From Setoptus koraiensis (Eukaryota > Animalia > Arthropoda), in NCBI GenBank assembly GCA_048013815.1, contig CM106585.1, forward strand, positions 4,960,001-5,024,000: DNA of 64,000 bases, written 5' to 3'. This document shows positions 9,292-15,444 of this stretch, piece after piece; position 1 is the first letter of the stretch; each line of letters begins with the position of its first letter. The position numbers and the translations under genes are program-made. The notes under the pieces are model-generated. The model made no database searches. It had not been told where the DNA came from and saw only the letters and a list, made by a program, of their open reading frames with translations.

Positions 9292-10759
9292 TTATTCAGA
9301 CAGTTCTGGATTAAAATTTTTCGCCACTTGAAACAGTCGTTCGAACATGTCCCTGTAGGAATTCAGCCGATCTAGACCCTGTGATAGTTTAATTGTCATG
9401 CCCTCGAAAGAATCGACAATGTTCTTTGCTGCGCCAATCAATTTGTCAACGGTTGTAGTTCCTAAACTTCTAATATCATCACTCAATAGCCTTCCGGAAT
9501 TTAATGTTGCAGTACAATACTCTTTGATAATTGCATCATTATCGGCATTGTCAGTATTGTCGGTATTGTTGGCTTCTGCTGTAGTTCGTTGCGAAAAGTA
9601 AGTGGCGATATCCTCTGAGAACTCTCGCATAATTCGCTGGATGTTCATGGTAAATGTATGCATAAACGAATCATAAATTGATAGTCGCAATATGAGTTCG
9701 GTGGTCAATAGGTCACTGAATTTATTCTGTAATTCAGTAACCTGTGCCTTGATTGATTTAGTGAGCAACTCATCACTGTGACCTCGGGAAAAACTTCTCT
9801 TGTATGTCTTATCTGTGTCAATCATCGTTCTAGACAGATCCAGAATTTGTTTATCGAATCTACTGATCTCGTCCTTAATACTTTGATCGTCATTTGATGT
9901 TGCACTCAGGTAGCACTTTAGAATAGTCAACGACACTTTCAAGTTTATTAGCGAATGCTCGAAAACTGAGCCACCGTCGCATTTGTTTGATCTGATCAGC
10001 GATTCTAACTTCTCGTTCTCTTTCACCACTGTAACCAAAGAAATCTTGGAGCAGGTGCTCAGCTTGCGCTCCTTTATGACTCTTGCTACTGTCATCTTCA
10101 CCGGGCTTAACATCGCCCCACCAAACACATCGAAAGAGGAACTGTGTTTGGTTTTGCGAGCGAGAGAAAATTCATTAATTGAGTAGTTAATTATCTGATA
10201 ATGATATTGTAACTAGATTAGTAAGTTAGAACAGTTCGATCTATCCATCTATTTACCCCAACAAGAGTTTCCCGGCCTTCAAGATGACTTTACTCATCGA
10301 TATAACTTTACTCGTTACCGTGTCCAGCGAACGTTCTGCTATTGGTACGTCGACATCCGTATCTAGTTTCAAATCATTTGCGGATTTGTCGGTGTTTGAC
10401 AAGTGCAATGACTGACCTGGAATAGCCTCCCTCTCTTGCTCTTCCTCATTTTTCTCTTCCTCCTTTTCATCATCCACATCTTCGTCATCCTCATCCTCGG
10501 GCGGTTGCTCCCTTGTACGCTGGACAATGGCACCCGATTGGGCTCGTGGATTGTCGTGGACGGCCAATCGAGAGCTGGCGCTCATTATATCATCTTCTAT
10601 GGTTGCAAATTCAGGTCCACTCAAACGACTAGCCAAGTCGAGAATGTTTGGCTCTTGTCTCACCGACACAACAGACAATTCGCTGTAGTATCGATCTGTG
10701 AGGGTTTTGGCGGCAATACTTAACGAGTTTGTGGGTGATCCATCTGCTTCAGCTATCAA
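9292..10759 (-). CDS. uncharacterised acidic + alpha-helical protein (at least 2 exons, 5' end unresolved)
   Basis: ORFs 10253-10759 and 9292-10128 join in frame through a GT-AG intron at 10256-10142 (KLLLG|SSFDVFGG). It has an acidic tract and predicted helical/coiled-coil composition; I recognise no family. Confidence 0.6.
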
Positions 10760-11899
10760 ATATCAGATTTCGCCGGATTTAGTCTAATTAATTATTCTAA
10801 CAATGGTTGACTCGATCGTTGTCAAAATACTATTTCAATAACTTACCTAGCGCCAAGGGAGCTTTTAGATTTTGACTCTGCAATCTTAAATATTGGCGTT
10901 GTTGACGTTTCCAACGAGGCCAACATTGTGTGAACGAAATAAGGGTTGCAAACAACAGAAATATTATCGCGCTATTTGCGCACTGTAACCCACAAATTGA
11001 TACCATTTTTGCTAATCTCTGTTACATCTATCTCTAATGAATGATTATCTTGAGACTCCTCAGCGATATTCAAAATAGTTCAAATGAAATGCAGAGCTCA
11101 TGCTAGCCTCGTGTTTGATTGTGGTATCTATAAGTAGCAATCATATTTTTAGTCCATTCAACTGCTCCAAATTACTATCACATCGTTGGAAGGAATTTAA
11201 AAATAGATCACTACACTCCAGATTGATGGTTGGTTGGTTGATACCGTTATCGTTTGTTCTGAACGATAGAATGAACGATATACACGGGGAAAATATGGGC
11301 ACCAACAGTTGCCAGCACCAGCTAAATGATTGGGTATGCAATTTTTATCGGTGCATTTGGCCGAAATTCTCACGAAACTGAACGTAGAGCCTGTTCGACG
11401 ATGTATACTTCGGATACTTGTAAACTCGAATTTGTTAGTCTGCTCATCATACGATCGTAATGACCTGATGCTGGAATAAACATCGTTCGTGTCTAAATAA
11501 CTCCATACAAGTGTTTGGGTGGTTGTTTCGATCGATTCTCTTGAACATGACACTGTTCGAGCAAACGAGGCAGACCTAATTACAACGCATCAAGAGAATT
11601 TAGAAAATTTCATCCCTTTCTAGTTTCGTACAACTGATAATAAGGAACAACTTGAATAGTTGTCATCGAATCGCAGTTTTATCAAACCGTATACATCCAG
11701 CACTGTATTTACATTTTTGTTATTGCTGCACGAAACAGCACATGTACGAAATAGCACATGTACTGTACATGTGCAAATACGTTTTTGCAACAACACTATA
11801 TTTCACAAGCATGGCGATAGCAGCCGGCTTAACCTTGGTTTTCCCTAGTAGTGTGACCAACAAATATTATCCATTGTTGTTGATAACCAGTGTCATTAA

Positions 11900-13309
11900 A
11901 TGTCTAAATATTTATTAAGAACAATCAAACTTAGCTTGGCCCGGAGACAAATCTTCTTTCCTGGAGCCCATGACGTCGGTCGAGGCATCAGAGGTTATCA
12001 TGAGGATAACAAATACTCCCAACTGTCAGATGAAACATTGGAGGATTTAAGCGATAAATTCGATGCTCTACTCGAAACAAATCCAGGGGCCGATGTCTCT
12101 CTCAACAATGGCGTACTGACCATAGTTGTTGATGAAAACTCCACATATGTCATAAACAAACAAACACCCAATCGTCAGTTGTGGTTTTCATCACCTCTTA
12201 GTGGACCAAAGAGATTTGATTTAGACAATGCCTCTTGGGTAGAGAGAAAAACTCATACCAACTTGTATGATATTCTATCTGAAGAGTTCAGTTTCCTTTT
12301 GCAGAGGCCTGTCACAAACAAACTTAGATTAGCCATGAAACAAATAGACCCCCAAGATCGAAACATAATTATATTTCCCGGGGCCGATAACGTCCGTAAA
12401 GGCTTAGGTACCGGTTTATTATGTATTAAGGAAGCAGAAGAAACTTACAAGAGGGCCAATGATTTATTGAAATTCGACTTATTGTCTTTGTGTCTGCGCG
12501 GGCCAAACGAACATTTGGTGAATAATTTGCAGAATCGACATCTGGCAGCATTTGTCACGTCCCACGCTAGCCTGGCAAAGTTGGAACATGACTATCCCAA
12601 ATCAACTGATTATGTGTCGGGTGTAACTGGCGAGGATGTCGGCATGTTCAATTCTCTCGTTTTTGCCAATTGCCTGACATTTGAAAAGGCTCTTGAACTA
12701 GTCAAATTAAGGGCACAGGCACTGGTTAAAGCATCTGAGATAATACCTAGTGCTCAAATTCTTATTAAATTGAGACCTGCCACACAGAAACACAAGATAT
12801 GCCTTGCTGCCGAGCGCCATTGTATTGGTTTGGGAATACCTGAAGAGATAGCGGTATGCTCTATAACAAAATATTTAGGACGTGGAAGGATACAATTAGG
12901 TGGCCACCTCGAGGCGATCAAGTATCTGACTGAGGAGGGTGCTAGATTATTTGAGTTTAGAGATTTTAAAATACTACCCGATAGCTCAGGATATAATACT
13001 AAACTTATGAGACCAGTAGAGGAGTTATTAGACAGGCTTCTGAAAACTGACGATCTGAAATATCCCGACAGATGTAGAGTGTATTCAATGAGTGAAGGCA
13101 ACGAATATAAGAACGTAGAAACAATCCGCAGAGATTTAATATCACACGTGTGTAGGCCAATCAAATTCGAGCAGACCATTCAGTGTATCTATAAACGAGA
13201 TAGAGATCTTGCTCAGCCCAACACATATGTCATGTGGGATCGTGACATGCTGAAGTATTTGGATGATATCAATGGTCGCGCCAAAAGAGCAGCAAAATTG
13301 ATCAAATGA
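11900..13309 (+). CDS. FXN-MCAT: frataxin - malonyl-CoA:ACP transacylase (MCAT/FabD)-like fusion protein
   Basis: Single 469-aa ORF. aa ~35-137 carry the frataxin signatures (acidic helix LSDETLEDLSDKF, GVLTI, YVINKQTPNRQLWFSSPLSGPKRFD). aa ~150-469 are colinear with mitochondrial MCAT (IFPG, FDLLSLCLRGP, LVKLRAQAL, HCIGLGI, GHLEAIKYL, RPIKFEQTIQCIY). The N-terminus is basic and presequence-like. Confidence 0.9.
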   Translation: MSKYLLRTIKLSLARRQIFFPGAHDVGRGIRGYHEDNKYSQLSDETLEDLSDKFDALLETNPGADVSLNNGVLTIVVDENSTYVINKQTPNRQLWFSSPLSGPKRFDLDNASWVERKTHTNLYDILSEEFSFLLQRPVTNKLRLAMKQIDPQDRNIIIFPGADNVRKGLGTGLLCIKEAEETYKRANDLLKFDLLSLCLRGPNEHLVNNLQNRHLAAFVTSHASLAKLEHDYPKSTDYVSGVTGEDVGMFNSLVFANCLTFEKALELVKLRAQALVKASEIIPSAQILIKLRPATQKHKICLAAERHCIGLGIPEEIAVCSITKYLGRGRIQLGGHLEAIKYLTEEGARLFEFRDFKILPDSSGYNTKLMRPVEELLDRLLKTDDLKYPDRCRVYSMSEGNEYKNVETIRRDLISHVCRPIKFEQTIQCIYKRDRDLAQPNTYVMWDRDMLKYLDDINGRAKRAAKLIK

Positions 13310-13386
13310 GTTGAGAGATAGCTAGTTCCAATACGAATAAATCTTTTGGAAATAATTACATGAAATCGTCGAGCTAATCTGGACCT

Positions 13387-14195
13387 CTGTCTAATAACCA
13401 ACTCATGGCACCATCAACAAATAGTGTAGCGTTATTAGGCTACATGTCCCATACGTGTCTAAACACTTTAACTGAGATAAAACGTGATATGCTACAGGAC
13501 TGTCTCTACATGATTTTGTACTACCGAATCTTGGGCATTTTATTAGGTCGTTAAGACCAAACAAGGGACTTCAAGCATTCTTAGATCACATAACAATTCA
13601 CACAAAAACGAATGCCCCAGAGTTTCACATTTTGATTCTGTTTTGTGAATGTGCCACCCACCCTATTAGTATTTTGGATGATACAGAAGTTTATGAACAA
13701 AAACCCTTTTGCCCAGAAACTCTTAAAGTTATCTCAGGATTTTTAAACAATTTTGTCTTTCGTGTCATTTATAAAAAATTAATCTTTCAGGAACACAGAT
13801 TCATTCTGTAGCGAAATTGCGTATGCATCGCCAGATACGCGAATAAACGGCCGCCTTCATCAGAGGTTTTCAGACCATCGTTAATCCCGAATGGATCCGT
13901 GTTTTCAACGCCCGCATTGCAACTTCTTATTAGTGGTGACAACAATGCAATTGATATAGCCAATCTCAGGAAATATACTAAATATTTTGGTGGCTTTCAC
14001 AGTTACCATCGTGTCATCAGTTGGCAATGGGCTATACTGGAGAAGAATTTCGGCGCCGAAGAGCTTAAAATGTTCTTAAATTTCATTACGAGCTGTTCAA
14101 AGCCGCCACTACTGGGTTCCGCCAATCTATCGATATCGCAGTGGAAAATGTTACGTTATGCCTTTAGAAGTAATGCTGGCTTTGAACTGTCGTAA
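13387..14195 (+). pseudogene. UBE3B: collapsed UBE3B-like HECT E3 ligase pseudogene
   Basis: Fragments TCLNTLTEIK, LPNLGHFIRSLRPNKGLQAFLDH, LILFCECATHPISILDDTEVYEQ, SGFLNNFVF, and the HECT segment [29 protein letters not shown]...[12 protein letters not shown]...[10 protein letters not shown]...[14 protein letters not shown]. Lesions: frameshifts, an in-frame TAA at 13844-13846, and loss of the catalytic-Cys segment. Confidence 0.85.
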
Positions 14196-14551
14196 TATAA
14201 TCATCGAGAAATTGTTGAAAAGAAAACGAAAATTATCTTCGGAATCTTAGAGTCTATGCAGTGTATCATCGTTAGGTGATTGTATGCAATATCGAGCGCC
14301 GTTCTAGGAATTCATCAGATTACTGGGCAGACCTTTTCCACACGGACATCTAGGTTCGACTGCCAGGAAATTGCCTTCTCGGCACAACTATTCTGACTAC
14401 TGCACAAACAAAAATCAGGAAAAACCTCTCCGCCGTGACTATGATTGAAATGTGTGTCGAAGTTTGTTCATTGCAATGATGACACTAACTTGATAATGTT
14501 TTATATATTCGAGTTGCCTCTAGATAAATAGATGTCCTCAGCAATAATCTA

Positions 14552-15444
14552 TCATTTGCCTAGGCTGGGATCGCGCTTTGAACTAACAAAAGCTTTGAAT
14601 CTGTCGGGAGATAGAGAATATATCGATTAGTGACCAACATAGACGCGACCAAAGTGTTCACGTAGAACAAAACTACTCTCGAGTAATAGCGAGGATCAAC
14701 TTACCTAACTATTGCCTCATCACTGACCGAGTGGTAGGTGGGCAAACTTTTCTTAACTCGATCTATATATGCCACTAATGATTTAAATTCACTCAAATCA
14801 TAGTCGCATACTTCGCTCAAAGTTAGACCGCTGACAATTGAGACATCTGCAACAGTAAGGTTATTACCGGTGGAAAATTGTTTCCCTGTGACAATATCAT
14901 CCAAATGTTTCAGAACATTTTTGAATTCTTTCTCATTCGCCTCATCCAACTCAGGGTTGCCGAAAATAAATGGTTTCAGCAATTCGCTTTGGGCCTTATA
15001 CAATTTAGTTAAATCCCAATTAAGCATCATGTCGACTTTAGCTCTTTGAACCGGATCTTTCGGGTACAGCGAATCATCTTTGCCGTATTTATTAACCAAG
15101 TAGGTGATAATAACACGACTGATTTTGTGCAGCGTAAGAGTGATAAATAAAATTGTTGGTGCAGTTAAAGCATAAAATATAAAAAGAATGAGAAAGATAG
15201 AAATTACATACATGAGAAGACATTAGGTCGCTAGGTAAGCTAACCTTTCGTAGAGAACCAGATCTCCATCCACAATAGTTGGAACAGTGTGTTGCGGATT
15301 TATCTTGAGAAATTCTTCACTCAATTGTTCACCTTTAGCTAAGTCAAGGTATTTCTTGTTTAGCTCTATGCCAAGCTTATCGGCTACCAATTCAACGGTT
15401 CGACATGGTGGGCTCTCCGGCATATAGTAAAAGTCGACAGGCAT
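14552..15444 (-). CDS. GstD: glutathione S-transferase, delta/epsilon class (3 exons)
   Basis: Exons 15444-15245, 15118-14705 and 14600-14552 total 220 aa. Motifs: DFYYMPESPPCR, INPQHTVPTIVD, LYES|RVIITYLVNKY, LYPKDP, LTVADVSI. Confidence 0.92.

What the first reader, a model, noticed from the sequence alone, without database searches (positions are those of the whole stretch)
11900..13309. Frataxin fused in frame to an MCAT/FabD-like protein: candidate link between Fe-S assembly, mitochondrial ACP and mitoribosome assembly
Seen: one stop-free 469-aa ORF with no intron signals. An apparently intact frataxin core (acidic ridge, N-K-Q, Q-x-W, SPxSGPKR) ends at ~12310 and runs directly into a full-length mitochondrial MCAT homologue. 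Established: frataxin activates the NFS1-ISD11-acyl-ACP-ISCU complex; MCAT loads malonyl onto that same mitochondrial ACP; MCAT has also been seen as a structural factor in human mitoribosomal small-subunit assembly intermediates, next to the Fe-S protein METTL17. Inference: the fusion may physically couple frataxin to ACP or to nascent mtSSU/METTL17, or may be a polyprotein processed by MPP. I know of no description of this architecture, but I have not run a search.
Basis: partly seen in the sequence, partly recalled or inferred. Interest (0 to 1): 0.9.

Follow-up and report, generated by a model that had tools for sequence, protein, structure and literature searches.

The report
Mite frataxin fused to dead MCAT
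In a probable gall/rust (eriophyoid) mite, the coding region of the iron-sulfur assembly protein frataxin sits inside the front of a catalytically dead MCAT-like gene, giving one transcribed mitochondrial precursor found in no other organism searched; it probably arose by a local rearrangement, and any working link between the two halves is untested.

Summary
Window 11900-13309 (+) is one 469-codon ORF with a frataxin domain (Pfam E 2e-32) and then a full-length homologue of human mitochondrial MCAT (E 2e-48; model TM 0.92-0.94 to 2C2N/8CSP).

- **Assembly and transcription:** DNA contigs from three studies carry it unchanged. An RNA contig crosses the frataxin-MCAT joint without splicing.
- **Rarity:** No protein with both halves appeared among 1.84 billion representatives or in the papers searched. 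About 48 related mites have stand-alone frataxin and about 21 have stand-alone MCAT-like genes.

1. The MCAT half, like its whole mite clade, lacks the catalytic Ser, His and Gln.
2. Frataxin, without its own presequence, lies between two diverged copies of the MCAT N-terminus (51/69 nt identical). Copy A is the only possible import signal.
3. In at least two related mites the two genes lie about 9 kb apart. Unchecked scan notes also list many fusions and presequence swaps in this genome.

Proximity and mutational habit therefore explain the pairing. Tethering to ACP or the mitoribosome stays speculative, and cleavage at the presequence-like linker is plausible. Scan notes s1-359736 and s1-359752 cover the same DNA.

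The parts
11900..13309 (+). Whole fusion ORF, 469 codons plus stop. There is no internal stop, and no splice joint appears in the RNA contigs.
11900..11995 (+). Copy A, aa 1-32: an N-terminal leader derived from the MCAT N-terminus. It is basic, has no acidic residue before D24, and is predicted disordered. It is the likely import presequence, because it holds the only Met upstream of the frataxin domain.
11921..11989 (+). Duplicated core of copy A, aa 8-30. It matches 12314-12343 plus 12368-12406 at 51/69 nt and 13/23 aa. It lacks the 24 nt that encode IDPQDRNI in copy B.
   Evidence: family D1, 81% over 32 nt, spacing 393; 0 of 10000 shuffles reach it
11996..12313 (+). Frataxin module, aa 33-138: the mature domain without its own presequence, complete to within 1-2 residues of the C-terminus.
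   Evidence: pLDDT above 90 for aa 40-130; 29/29 invariant columns kept
12314..12361 (+). Linker, aa 139-154, which is the start of copy B (the native MCAT N-terminal segment, orthologous to ALRELKK-VDPRDRY of relatives). Model confidence is low here. Together with the frataxin tail (aa 130-149) it forms a stretch with no acidic residue and net charge +4, with the highest hydrophobic moment among the acid-free basic windows found in the protein. It is a candidate internal MPP site.
12362..13306 (+). MCAT-like (FabD-fold) module, aa 155-469. The fold is intact and the catalytic residues are lost.
   Evidence: 8csp_8 and 2c2n: TM by target 0.92-0.94, rmsd 1.7 A
12635..12637 (+). Asp246 at the position of the nucleophile Ser (GFSVGE in human, GEDVGM here, GGxGVG in related mites).
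12995..12997 (+). Asn366 at the position of the catalytic His (AFHT in human, GYNT here).
13336..13341 (+). AATAAA, 27 nt after the stop: a candidate poly(A) signal. The RNA contig 13161-13633 runs past it, so the 3' end is not settled.

Best explanation
This is a genuine, expressed, lineage-specific chimeric gene that encodes one mitochondrial precursor.

**Origin (inferred).**
- The coding region of mature frataxin was copied into the 5' end of a Ser-less MCAT-like gene between codons about 32 and 33. It lacked its own presequence and its last 1-2 codons and stop.
- About 25 MCAT codons were duplicated on either side of the insert.
- A local template switch or duplication between genes that lay a few kb apart fits this pattern.

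**Working (inferred).**
- The MCAT-derived copy A (aa 1-32) serves as the import presequence. After the duplication it lost an acidic 8-residue stretch.
- The frataxin module keeps the ordinary frataxin job of activating the NFS1-ISCU cysteine desulfurase complex.
- The MCAT module is non-catalytic. It keeps whatever scaffold role preserves it in all these mites, most plausibly the mtSSU assembly role known for human MCAT.
- The two modules are independent and joined by a flexible, presequence-like linker of about 20 residues. I put the odds that MPP cuts there, Arg5,6-style, at about 40:60.

**Why these two partners.** The pairing reflects genomic proximity and this genome's habit of making chimeric mitochondrial genes. 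It does not show a need for the two proteins to act together.
For: **Shown here.**
- One open frame.
- Identical DNA in three studies and an RNA contig across the joint.
- Both halves are under purifying selection. Frataxin keeps 29/29 columns invariant in 22 relatives, and MCAT keeps 39/43.
- The duplication is supported at several levels: z = 7.3 at protein level, 51/69 nt identical, 0 of 10000 shuffles reaching it, and independently reported by the repeat finder.
- Aa 1-32 do not resemble relatives' frataxin presequences (median z -0.25).
- There is no Met between M1 and M146, so frataxin can be made only with copy A.
- In the AF2 model aa 1-31 and 147-151 score below 50 while both domains score high. 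The pTM of 0.70 is what I would expect from the MCAT domain's share of the chain alone, though I saw no PAE.
- The windows with no acidic residue and net charge +4 or more are aa 1-24, the joint aa 130-149 and aa 282-304 inside the MCAT fold. The joint has the highest hydrophobic moment.
- Relatives have separate genes: about 48 stand-alone frataxins and about 21 stand-alone MCAT-likes.
- Frataxin and the MCAT-like gene lie 9.1-9.4 kb apart in a conserved block (bMERB-MCAT-Ras-PI3K-FXN-NIF) in at least two related species, once in each relative orientation.

**Context, not tested here.** Scan notes report many fusions and presequence captures in this genome.

**Precedent.** MPP cleaves Arg5,6 at an internal MTS-like site (PMC8734313).
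Against: - No protein-level data exist. Translation, import and cleavage are all inferred.
- The RNA contigs do not cover 11135-12100, so the transcript's 5' end and its use of the ATG at 11900 are not shown.
- None of the genes that surround FXN and MCAT in relatives is in this 64-kb window.
- The linkage is not seen within reach in L009 or in Fragariocoptes L003. Ancestral proximity in this lineage is therefore only plausible.
- Whether a stand-alone frataxin or MCAT copy survives elsewhere in the genome could not be checked.
- A frataxin copy complete exactly to its C-terminus and in frame is a lot to ask of a random template switch. Selection or extra steps may be involved.
- One relative's frataxin presequence (P0182) resembles aa 4-17 at z 3.9. 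This leaves a small chance that part of the leader comes from frataxin.
Confidence: 0.6

Rival explanations
1. Functional tethering. The stable two-domain protein uses the dead MCAT module as a docking device. It would bring frataxin either to the ACP held in the NFS1-ISD11-ACP-ISCU complex or to METTL17-bound mtSSU assembly intermediates. Fe-S supply and mitoribosome assembly would then be physically coupled.
For: - Both partners are matrix proteins.
- Human MCAT sits with the Fe-S protein METTL17 on mtSSU intermediates (PMC9892005; 8CSP).
- Frataxin loss depletes METTL17 (PMC11452305).
- A frataxin-fold protein (mS86) is a built-in mtSSU protein in Tetrahymena (PMC7326499; 6Z1P chain).
- The MCAT fold is conserved without catalysis in about 21 mites, which implies a binding or scaffold role.
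- The linker is only about 20 residues.
Against: - About 48 related mites manage with a separate frataxin.
- Gene proximity in relatives and the many fusions of unrelated partners noted in this genome (not checked here) explain the pairing without any function.
- The model shows no confident contact between the domains.
- The linker looks like a cleavage-prone presequence.
- No interaction was tested.
Confidence: 0.2
2. Only one half is used. In one version the frataxin part is a redundant young copy, or an untranslated leader, and MCAT is made from Met146. In the other version the MCAT part is a passenger.
For: - The RNA contigs start only at 12101.
- Met146 lies at the start of the native MCAT segment.
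- A parental frataxin copy may still exist elsewhere. This could not be checked.
Against: - 146 codons are open upstream of Met146.
- All 29 invariant frataxin columns are kept despite a long branch of 1.29.
- A product starting at Met146 would lack any presequence.
- The MCAT half keeps 39/43 invariant columns.
Confidence: 0.07
3. Artefact: a mis-assembly or a collapsed stop joins two separate genes.
For: None was found. Annotated frataxin fusions elsewhere, such as the PIP5K1B-FXN models, may be gene-model mergers; I did not check them.
Against: - Contigs from three independent studies span both joints with 0-1 differences.
- An RNA contig spans the frataxin-MCAT joint.
- The flanking duplication is in frame, with a spacing of 393 nt.
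Confidence: 0.02

Closest known systems
Yeast and fungal Arg5,6 tandem mitochondrial precursor, cut by MPP at an internal MTS-like site (PMC8734313)
   Same: - One gene and one N-terminal presequence for two matrix proteins in series.
- The joint is an acid-free, basic, amphipathic stretch (aa 130-149).
   Different: - Arg5 and Arg6 act in one pathway, and their fusion mirrors an operon.
- Here the partners come from different pathways and one is a pseudoenzyme.
- The fusion is confined to one lineage.
- Cleavage is not shown.
Human MCAT as an mtSSU assembly factor with METTL17 (PMC9892005; PDB 8CSP-8CSS)
   Same: The C-terminal module is a clear homologue (E 8e-48, TM 0.92).
   Different: - The mite module has lost Ser, His and Gln, so it cannot be the mtFAS enzyme.
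- Binding to a mite mtSSU is untested.
- Human MCAT carries no frataxin.
Stand-alone mitochondrial frataxin (FXN/Yfh1) in the NFS1-ISD11-ACP-ISCU complex (e.g. PDB 6NZU)
   Same: - Complete frataxin domain.
- All clade-invariant residues and the acidic helix 1 are kept.
   Different: - Its own presequence is replaced by an MCAT-derived leader.
- Its C-terminus continues into a 330-residue module.
Tetrahymena mS86, an apo-frataxin protein built into the mtSSU (PMC7326499; PDB 6Z1P)
   Same: A frataxin-fold protein is physically tied to mitoribosome small-subunit biology. It matches the frataxin half at E 9e-15.
   Different: - mS86 is a separate ribosomal protein of a ciliate.
- It is not fused to MCAT.
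- It shows a precedent for association, not the same mechanism.
Other chimeric mitochondrial genes noted in this same genome (COQ3-MRRF, NDUFS8 with the citrate synthase leader, mt-IleRS with the MRPL14 leader, MANF-STIM)
   Same: A leader or module is captured from a nearby gene by local duplication in an intron-poor, compact genome (notes not checked here).
   Different: - Several of those are shared by 30-40 related mites, whereas this one was seen in no relative.
- Here the captured piece is a whole mature protein placed inside the host gene, with a flanking duplication.
Annotated frataxin fusions in databases (PIP5K1B-FXN models in vertebrates; Ribosomal_L13-FXN in Aphelenchoides fujianensis, P0022)
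   Same: A frataxin domain sits in a longer predicted protein.
   Different: - The partners differ.
- Those are gene models without read evidence checked here, and may be merged neighbours.

Membership tests
Frataxin/CyaY (PF01491) | Domain match above Pfam's gathering score | tested here: met
   E 2.2e-32, 111.8 bits against a cut-off of 21.3, aa 35-136 on profile positions 2-105 of 107.
Frataxin/CyaY (PF01491) | Alpha-beta sandwich: N-terminal helix, antiparallel sheet, C-terminal helix | tested here: met
   The AF2 model has H32-60, six strands between 65 and 115, and H122-134, with pLDDT above 90. Foldseek's listed matches were all to the larger MCAT module, so the frataxin fold was not separately searched.
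Frataxin/CyaY (PF01491) | Conserved sheet residues (N-K-Q, Q-x-W, SGPxR) and acidic helix 1 used for ISCU/NFS1 contact and iron binding | tested here: met
   29 of 29 columns invariant in 22 mite frataxins are kept. About ten Asp/Glu lie in aa 35-65. Which residues contact NFS1/ISCU rests on my knowledge of human FXN.
Frataxin/CyaY (PF01491) | Activates Fe-S cluster synthesis in mitochondria | not testable with these tools
   Needs yfh1 complementation or a desulfurase assay.
Malonyl-CoA:ACP transacylase (FabD/MCAT, PF00698) | FabD two-subdomain fold | tested here: met
   Foldseek matches 8csp_8 and 2c2n at TM by target 0.92-0.94, rmsd 1.7 A, about 318 columns. phmmer gives E 1.9e-48.
Malonyl-CoA:ACP transacylase (FabD/MCAT, PF00698) | Nucleophile Ser in G-x-S-x-G | tested here: not met
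   The motif reads GEDVG, with Asp246. Related mites have GGxGVG, and canonical sequences have GFSVGE.
Malonyl-CoA:ACP transacylase (FabD/MCAT, PF00698) | Catalytic His and the GQGSQ oxyanion loop | tested here: not met
   The His position is Asn366, and the loop reads FPGADNV.
Malonyl-CoA:ACP transacylase (FabD/MCAT, PF00698) | Arg that binds the malonyl carboxylate | tested here: met
   Arg271 is kept (VKLRAQAL), but the position varies (Q, R, others) in related mites, so it is not under catalytic constraint.
Malonyl-CoA:ACP transacylase (FabD/MCAT, PF00698) | Pfam Acyl_transf_1 match | tested here: not met
   No match at E up to 1 for this protein, nor at E up to 0.01 for relative P0001. 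It is a homologue by phmmer and by fold, not a member as an enzyme.
MPP-processed tandem mitochondrial precursors (Arg5,6 type) | N-terminal presequence | tested here: inconclusive
   Aa 1-24 have no acidic residue, net charge +4 to +5, and are predicted disordered. No dedicated predictor was available.
MPP-processed tandem mitochondrial precursors (Arg5,6 type) | Internal MTS-like stretch at the joint | tested here: met
   Aa 130-149 have no acidic residue, net charge +4, and the highest hydrophobic moment among the acid-free basic windows. Model confidence is low there. This is judged by composition only.
MPP-processed tandem mitochondrial precursors (Arg5,6 type) | Two separate mature proteins after import | not testable with these tools
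   Needs an import or MPP assay, or proteomics.
mtSSU assembly factor MCAT | Binds METTL17-containing mtSSU intermediates | not testable with these tools
   Only homology to the human factor is shown.

The most novel reading that the evidence does not exclude
The protein stays in one piece. The catalytically dead MCAT module acts as a docking device that delivers frataxin to ACP-bearing Fe-S assembly complexes or to METTL17-bound small-subunit intermediates. It would be a natural Rosetta-stone fusion showing that Fe-S supply and mitoribosome assembly are physically coupled through MCAT's non-enzymatic role.
Probability: 0.17. Interest if true: 0.85.

Novelty: new variant of a known kind. Interest (0 to 1): 0.55.

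Why it matters
**If it is only a tandem precursor.** It is a clean, datable animal example of how a compact genome builds chimeric mitochondrial genes. A whole mature protein was dropped into a neighbour's 5' end, and the host's duplicated N-terminus was re-used as the import signal. It gives a new natural substrate for testing internal MPP processing.

**If the protein stays whole.** It would be independent genetic evidence for a link that is now only biochemical and structural in human cells: frataxin, Fe-S, METTL17 and MCAT on the small mitoribosomal subunit.

**In either case.** The partner is an MCAT that has lost catalysis yet is conserved in about 21 mites. That supports an essential non-enzymatic role for MCAT. 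It also raises the question of how these mites make malonyl-ACP, lipoate and acyl-ACP for LYR proteins.

Tried and rejected
- **Synteny.** I tested neighbours of the stand-alone MCAT-like and frataxin genes of relatives (bMERB, Ras/Roc, PI3K, GNAT, NIF, methyltransferase, DOMON monooxygenase) by tblastn against the window. None is present. The window therefore cannot show whether a parental frataxin site was emptied.
- **Second copies in the window.** There are none.
- **The same protein in the gene-position index.** It is not on record.
- **Metagenome scan with the whole protein.** It returned only a 25%-identical FabD.
- **Scan look-up by sequence.** It came back blank.
- **Reading aa 1-32 as frataxin's own presequence.** A multiple alignment suggested this. 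It was rejected as the main reading. Against 22 relatives' presequences the median z is -0.25, while the match to the gene's own copy B has z 7.3 and 74% DNA identity.
- **Reading FLLQRPV before copy B as a duplicate of MSKYLLR.** Rejected, because it aligns with the C-terminal tail of stand-alone mite frataxins.
- **First combined alignment (A3).** It misplaced the frataxins, so it was replaced by A5.
  - The first RNA-run search failed as busy and was repeated.
- **Third homologue search.** It was not spent, because searches already covered whole-length, exhaustive and frataxin-only searches.
Full report
**1. The observation**

Window 11900-13309 (+) is a single ORF of 469 codons. It starts at an ATG, and an in-frame TAA lies directly upstream.

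- **Frataxin half:** Pfam finds Frataxin_Cyay at aa 35-136 (E 2.2e-32). Sequence search of the PDB matches yeast and human frataxin at aa 24-138 (E 2e-22 to 1e-19).
- **MCAT half:** The same PDB search matches human mitochondrial MCAT at aa 151-446 (2C2N, 8CSP chain 8; E 1.9e-48).
- **Model:** An AlphaFold2 model built on a 57-row alignment has mean pLDDT 87.3.
  - It shows a confident frataxin sandwich at aa 32-134 and a confident FabD fold at aa 155-469.
  - Aa 1-31 are disordered and the linker at aa 135-154 has low confidence.
- **Fold match:** The MCAT module superposes on 8csp_8 and 2c2n at TM 0.92-0.94 and rmsd 1.7 A.

**2. It is not an artefact**

Logan contigs from three separate studies carry the locus.
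- X2 has one 4279-nt contig over 10300-13651 with no difference.
- X3 covers 11522-14224 with one difference at 12754, which is a synonymous third base.
- X5 covers the locus in overlapping pieces.

Run X7 is RNA. It shows CT..AC joints, which are minus-strand GT..AG introns, at 10752/10847, 14600/14705 and 15118/15245 in neighbouring genes. Its contig 12101-12364 crosses the frataxin-MCAT joint (12313/12314) with no difference, and no joint lies inside the ORF.

One gap remains. No RNA contig covers 11135-12100, so the 5' end of the transcript is not mapped.

**3.

*(a) The MCAT half is a pseudoenzyme.*
- Human GFSVGE reads GEDVGM, with Asp246 at the Ser position.
- FPGQGSQ reads FPGADNV.
- AFHT reads GYNT, with Asn366 at the His position.
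- Only the Arg (R271) remains.
- Pfam's Acyl_transf_1 model does not match it.
- The 21 nearest homologues, all stand-alone, also lack the Ser (GGxGVG) and the GQGSQ loop. One of them is named Aceria tosichella. More distant animal MCATs keep all four features.

*(b) The first 32 residues are a diverged duplicate of the MCAT N-terminus that follows frataxin.*
- Aa 8-30 match aa 139-148 plus 157-169, at 13/23 residues and 51/69 nt.
- The match has z 7.3, and no shuffle reaches it.
- The repeat finder reports the first block on its own, with an in-frame spacing of 393 nt.
- Copy A lacks the 8 residues IDPQDRNI of copy B, which hold two acidic residues.

*(c) The frataxin piece is the mature protein.*
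- It starts about where the mature protein of relatives starts.
- It ends within 1-2 residues of their C-terminus.
- It therefore has no presequence of its own.

*(d) Copy A is the only possible leader.* There is no Met between M1 and M146, so frataxin can be made only behind copy A.

**4. Relatives**

- **Frataxins:** The frataxin half finds about 48 stand-alone frataxins of 121-156 aa at 52-68% identity. The named one is from Fragariocoptes setiger, an eriophyoid of the family Phytoptidae.
- **Search for other fusions:** An exhaustive phmmer of the whole protein against 1.84 billion representatives gave no protein matching both halves among the best 150. None appeared among the 179 proteins fetched by then. 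The word-based search at 90% clustering gave none either.
- **Trees:**
  - The MCAT half is sister to all other Ser-less MCAT-likes (SH-aLRT 80, end branch 0.8).
  - The frataxin half pairs with Fragariocoptes (SH-aLRT 80, both branches long).
  - The organism is thus a divergent eriophyoid-type mite with no close relative in the collections. By parsimony the fusion arose on its own branch.
- **Selection:** Both halves are constrained. Frataxin keeps 29/29 columns invariant in relatives, and MCAT keeps 39/43.

**5. How it probably arose**

In at least two related species the two genes share one contig, 9.1-9.4 kb apart, in a conserved block: bMERB, MCAT-like, Ras, PI3K, (GNAT), frataxin, NIF.
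- The samples are SRR29510489 and SRR29527903 for one species and SRR29525001 for the other.
- Frataxin is convergent with MCAT in one species and co-oriented in the other.

Two random genes of a small genome would rarely lie that close. I therefore infer a local event, for example a replication template switch.
- It copied mature frataxin into the MCAT 5' end and then returned about 25 codons upstream, which produced the flanking duplication.
- The 74% identity of the two copies says the event is not recent.

Three caveats apply.
- The linkage is not seen within reach in L009 or in Fragariocoptes.
- None of the block's genes is in this window.

Unchecked scan notes report about 41 fusion notes in this genome. 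They also report repeated capture of mitochondrial leaders from nearby genes: NDUFS8 from citrate synthase, mt-IleRS from MRPL14, and a COQ3-MRRF fusion with an MPP-like joint. I did not test those notes. If they hold, this gene is one more product of a genome-wide habit.

**6. How it most likely works**

*Shown:* there is one ORF. It is transcribed across the joint, and both modules are conserved.

*Inferred:*
- Copy A is the import signal. It has no acidic residue in aa 1-23, net charge +5, and is disordered.
- The frataxin module does the usual frataxin job.
- The MCAT module does a non-catalytic job. The only such job known for MCAT is mtSSU head maturation with METTL17 (PMC9892005).
- The joint, aa 130-149, is one of only three stretches with no acidic residue and net charge +4 or more. 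It has the highest hydrophobic moment of the three, and its model confidence is low.
- The joint also contains the segment orthologous to the conserved ALRELKK-VDP of relatives.
- Cleavage by MPP, as in Arg5,6 (PMC8734313), is therefore plausible. I put it at about 40%.

**7. The coupling hypothesis**

The background is sound.
- MCAT works with METTL17 on the mtSSU.
- Frataxin loss removes METTL17.
- A frataxin-fold protein, mS86, is part of the Tetrahymena mtSSU.

Nothing here tests binding, however. Proximity explains the choice of partner, and some 48 relatives do without the fusion. I give the coupling hypothesis about 0.17-0.2.

**8. Novelty and score**

- I found no description of this architecture.
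- It is a new domain architecture of a known kind of event, a gene fusion or tandem mitochondrial precursor.
- It is of moderate interest now, and of high interest if the protein proves to stay whole and to dock frataxin.

Noticed in passing
window 12362-13306; proteins P0001-P0018, P0031-P0033: All the nearest MCAT homologues, about 21 stand-alone proteins from eriophyoid-type mites, lack the catalytic Ser and the GQGSQ loop but keep the fold. This is a clade-wide pseudo-MCAT. Other scattered lineages also lack the Ser, for example P0037 and P0122 (Asp), P0041 (Asn), and P0093 from Meloidogyne enterolobii (Gly).
   Followed up: partly
L008:7650-18459, L010:7156-17958, L006, L007: Related mites have a conserved block: bMERB, MCAT-like, Ras, PI3K, frataxin, NIF. 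Frataxin lies 9.1-9.4 kb from the MCAT-like gene and is inverted in one species relative to the other.
   Followed up: partly
window 13320-13696: Just downstream of the ORF, read depth about doubles. Extra contigs with 17-36 differences and loose ends at 13320 and 13696 lie here in three runs. This looks like a dispersed repeat with diverged copies elsewhere in the genome. There is no second copy in the window.
   Followed up: partly
window 13800-14230 and 14280-15300: Several diverged contigs overlap the HECT-like ORF (13899-14195) and the GST-like gene (14701-15213, minus strand, with an intron at 14601-14704 seen in RNA). This suggests paralogous copies elsewhere.
   Followed up: no
window 11727-11782: In the presumed promoter region of the fusion gene there is a tandem 16-nt repeat (TGCACGAAACAGCACA and TGTACGAAATAGCACA). 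It overlaps an 18-nt near-palindrome centred on 11764.
   Followed up: no
protein P0022 (Aphelenchoides fujianensis, 332 aa): An annotated protein has Ribosomal_L13 at aa 15-132 and Frataxin at aa 217-320. It is either another frataxin fusion, with a ribosomal protein, or a merged gene model.
   Followed up: partly
window 10752-10847: RNA contigs confirm a 94-nt minus-strand intron that joins the ORFs at 10253-10759 and further upstream. The gene that diverges from the fusion gene therefore ends its 5' part near 11000-11550.
   Followed up: no
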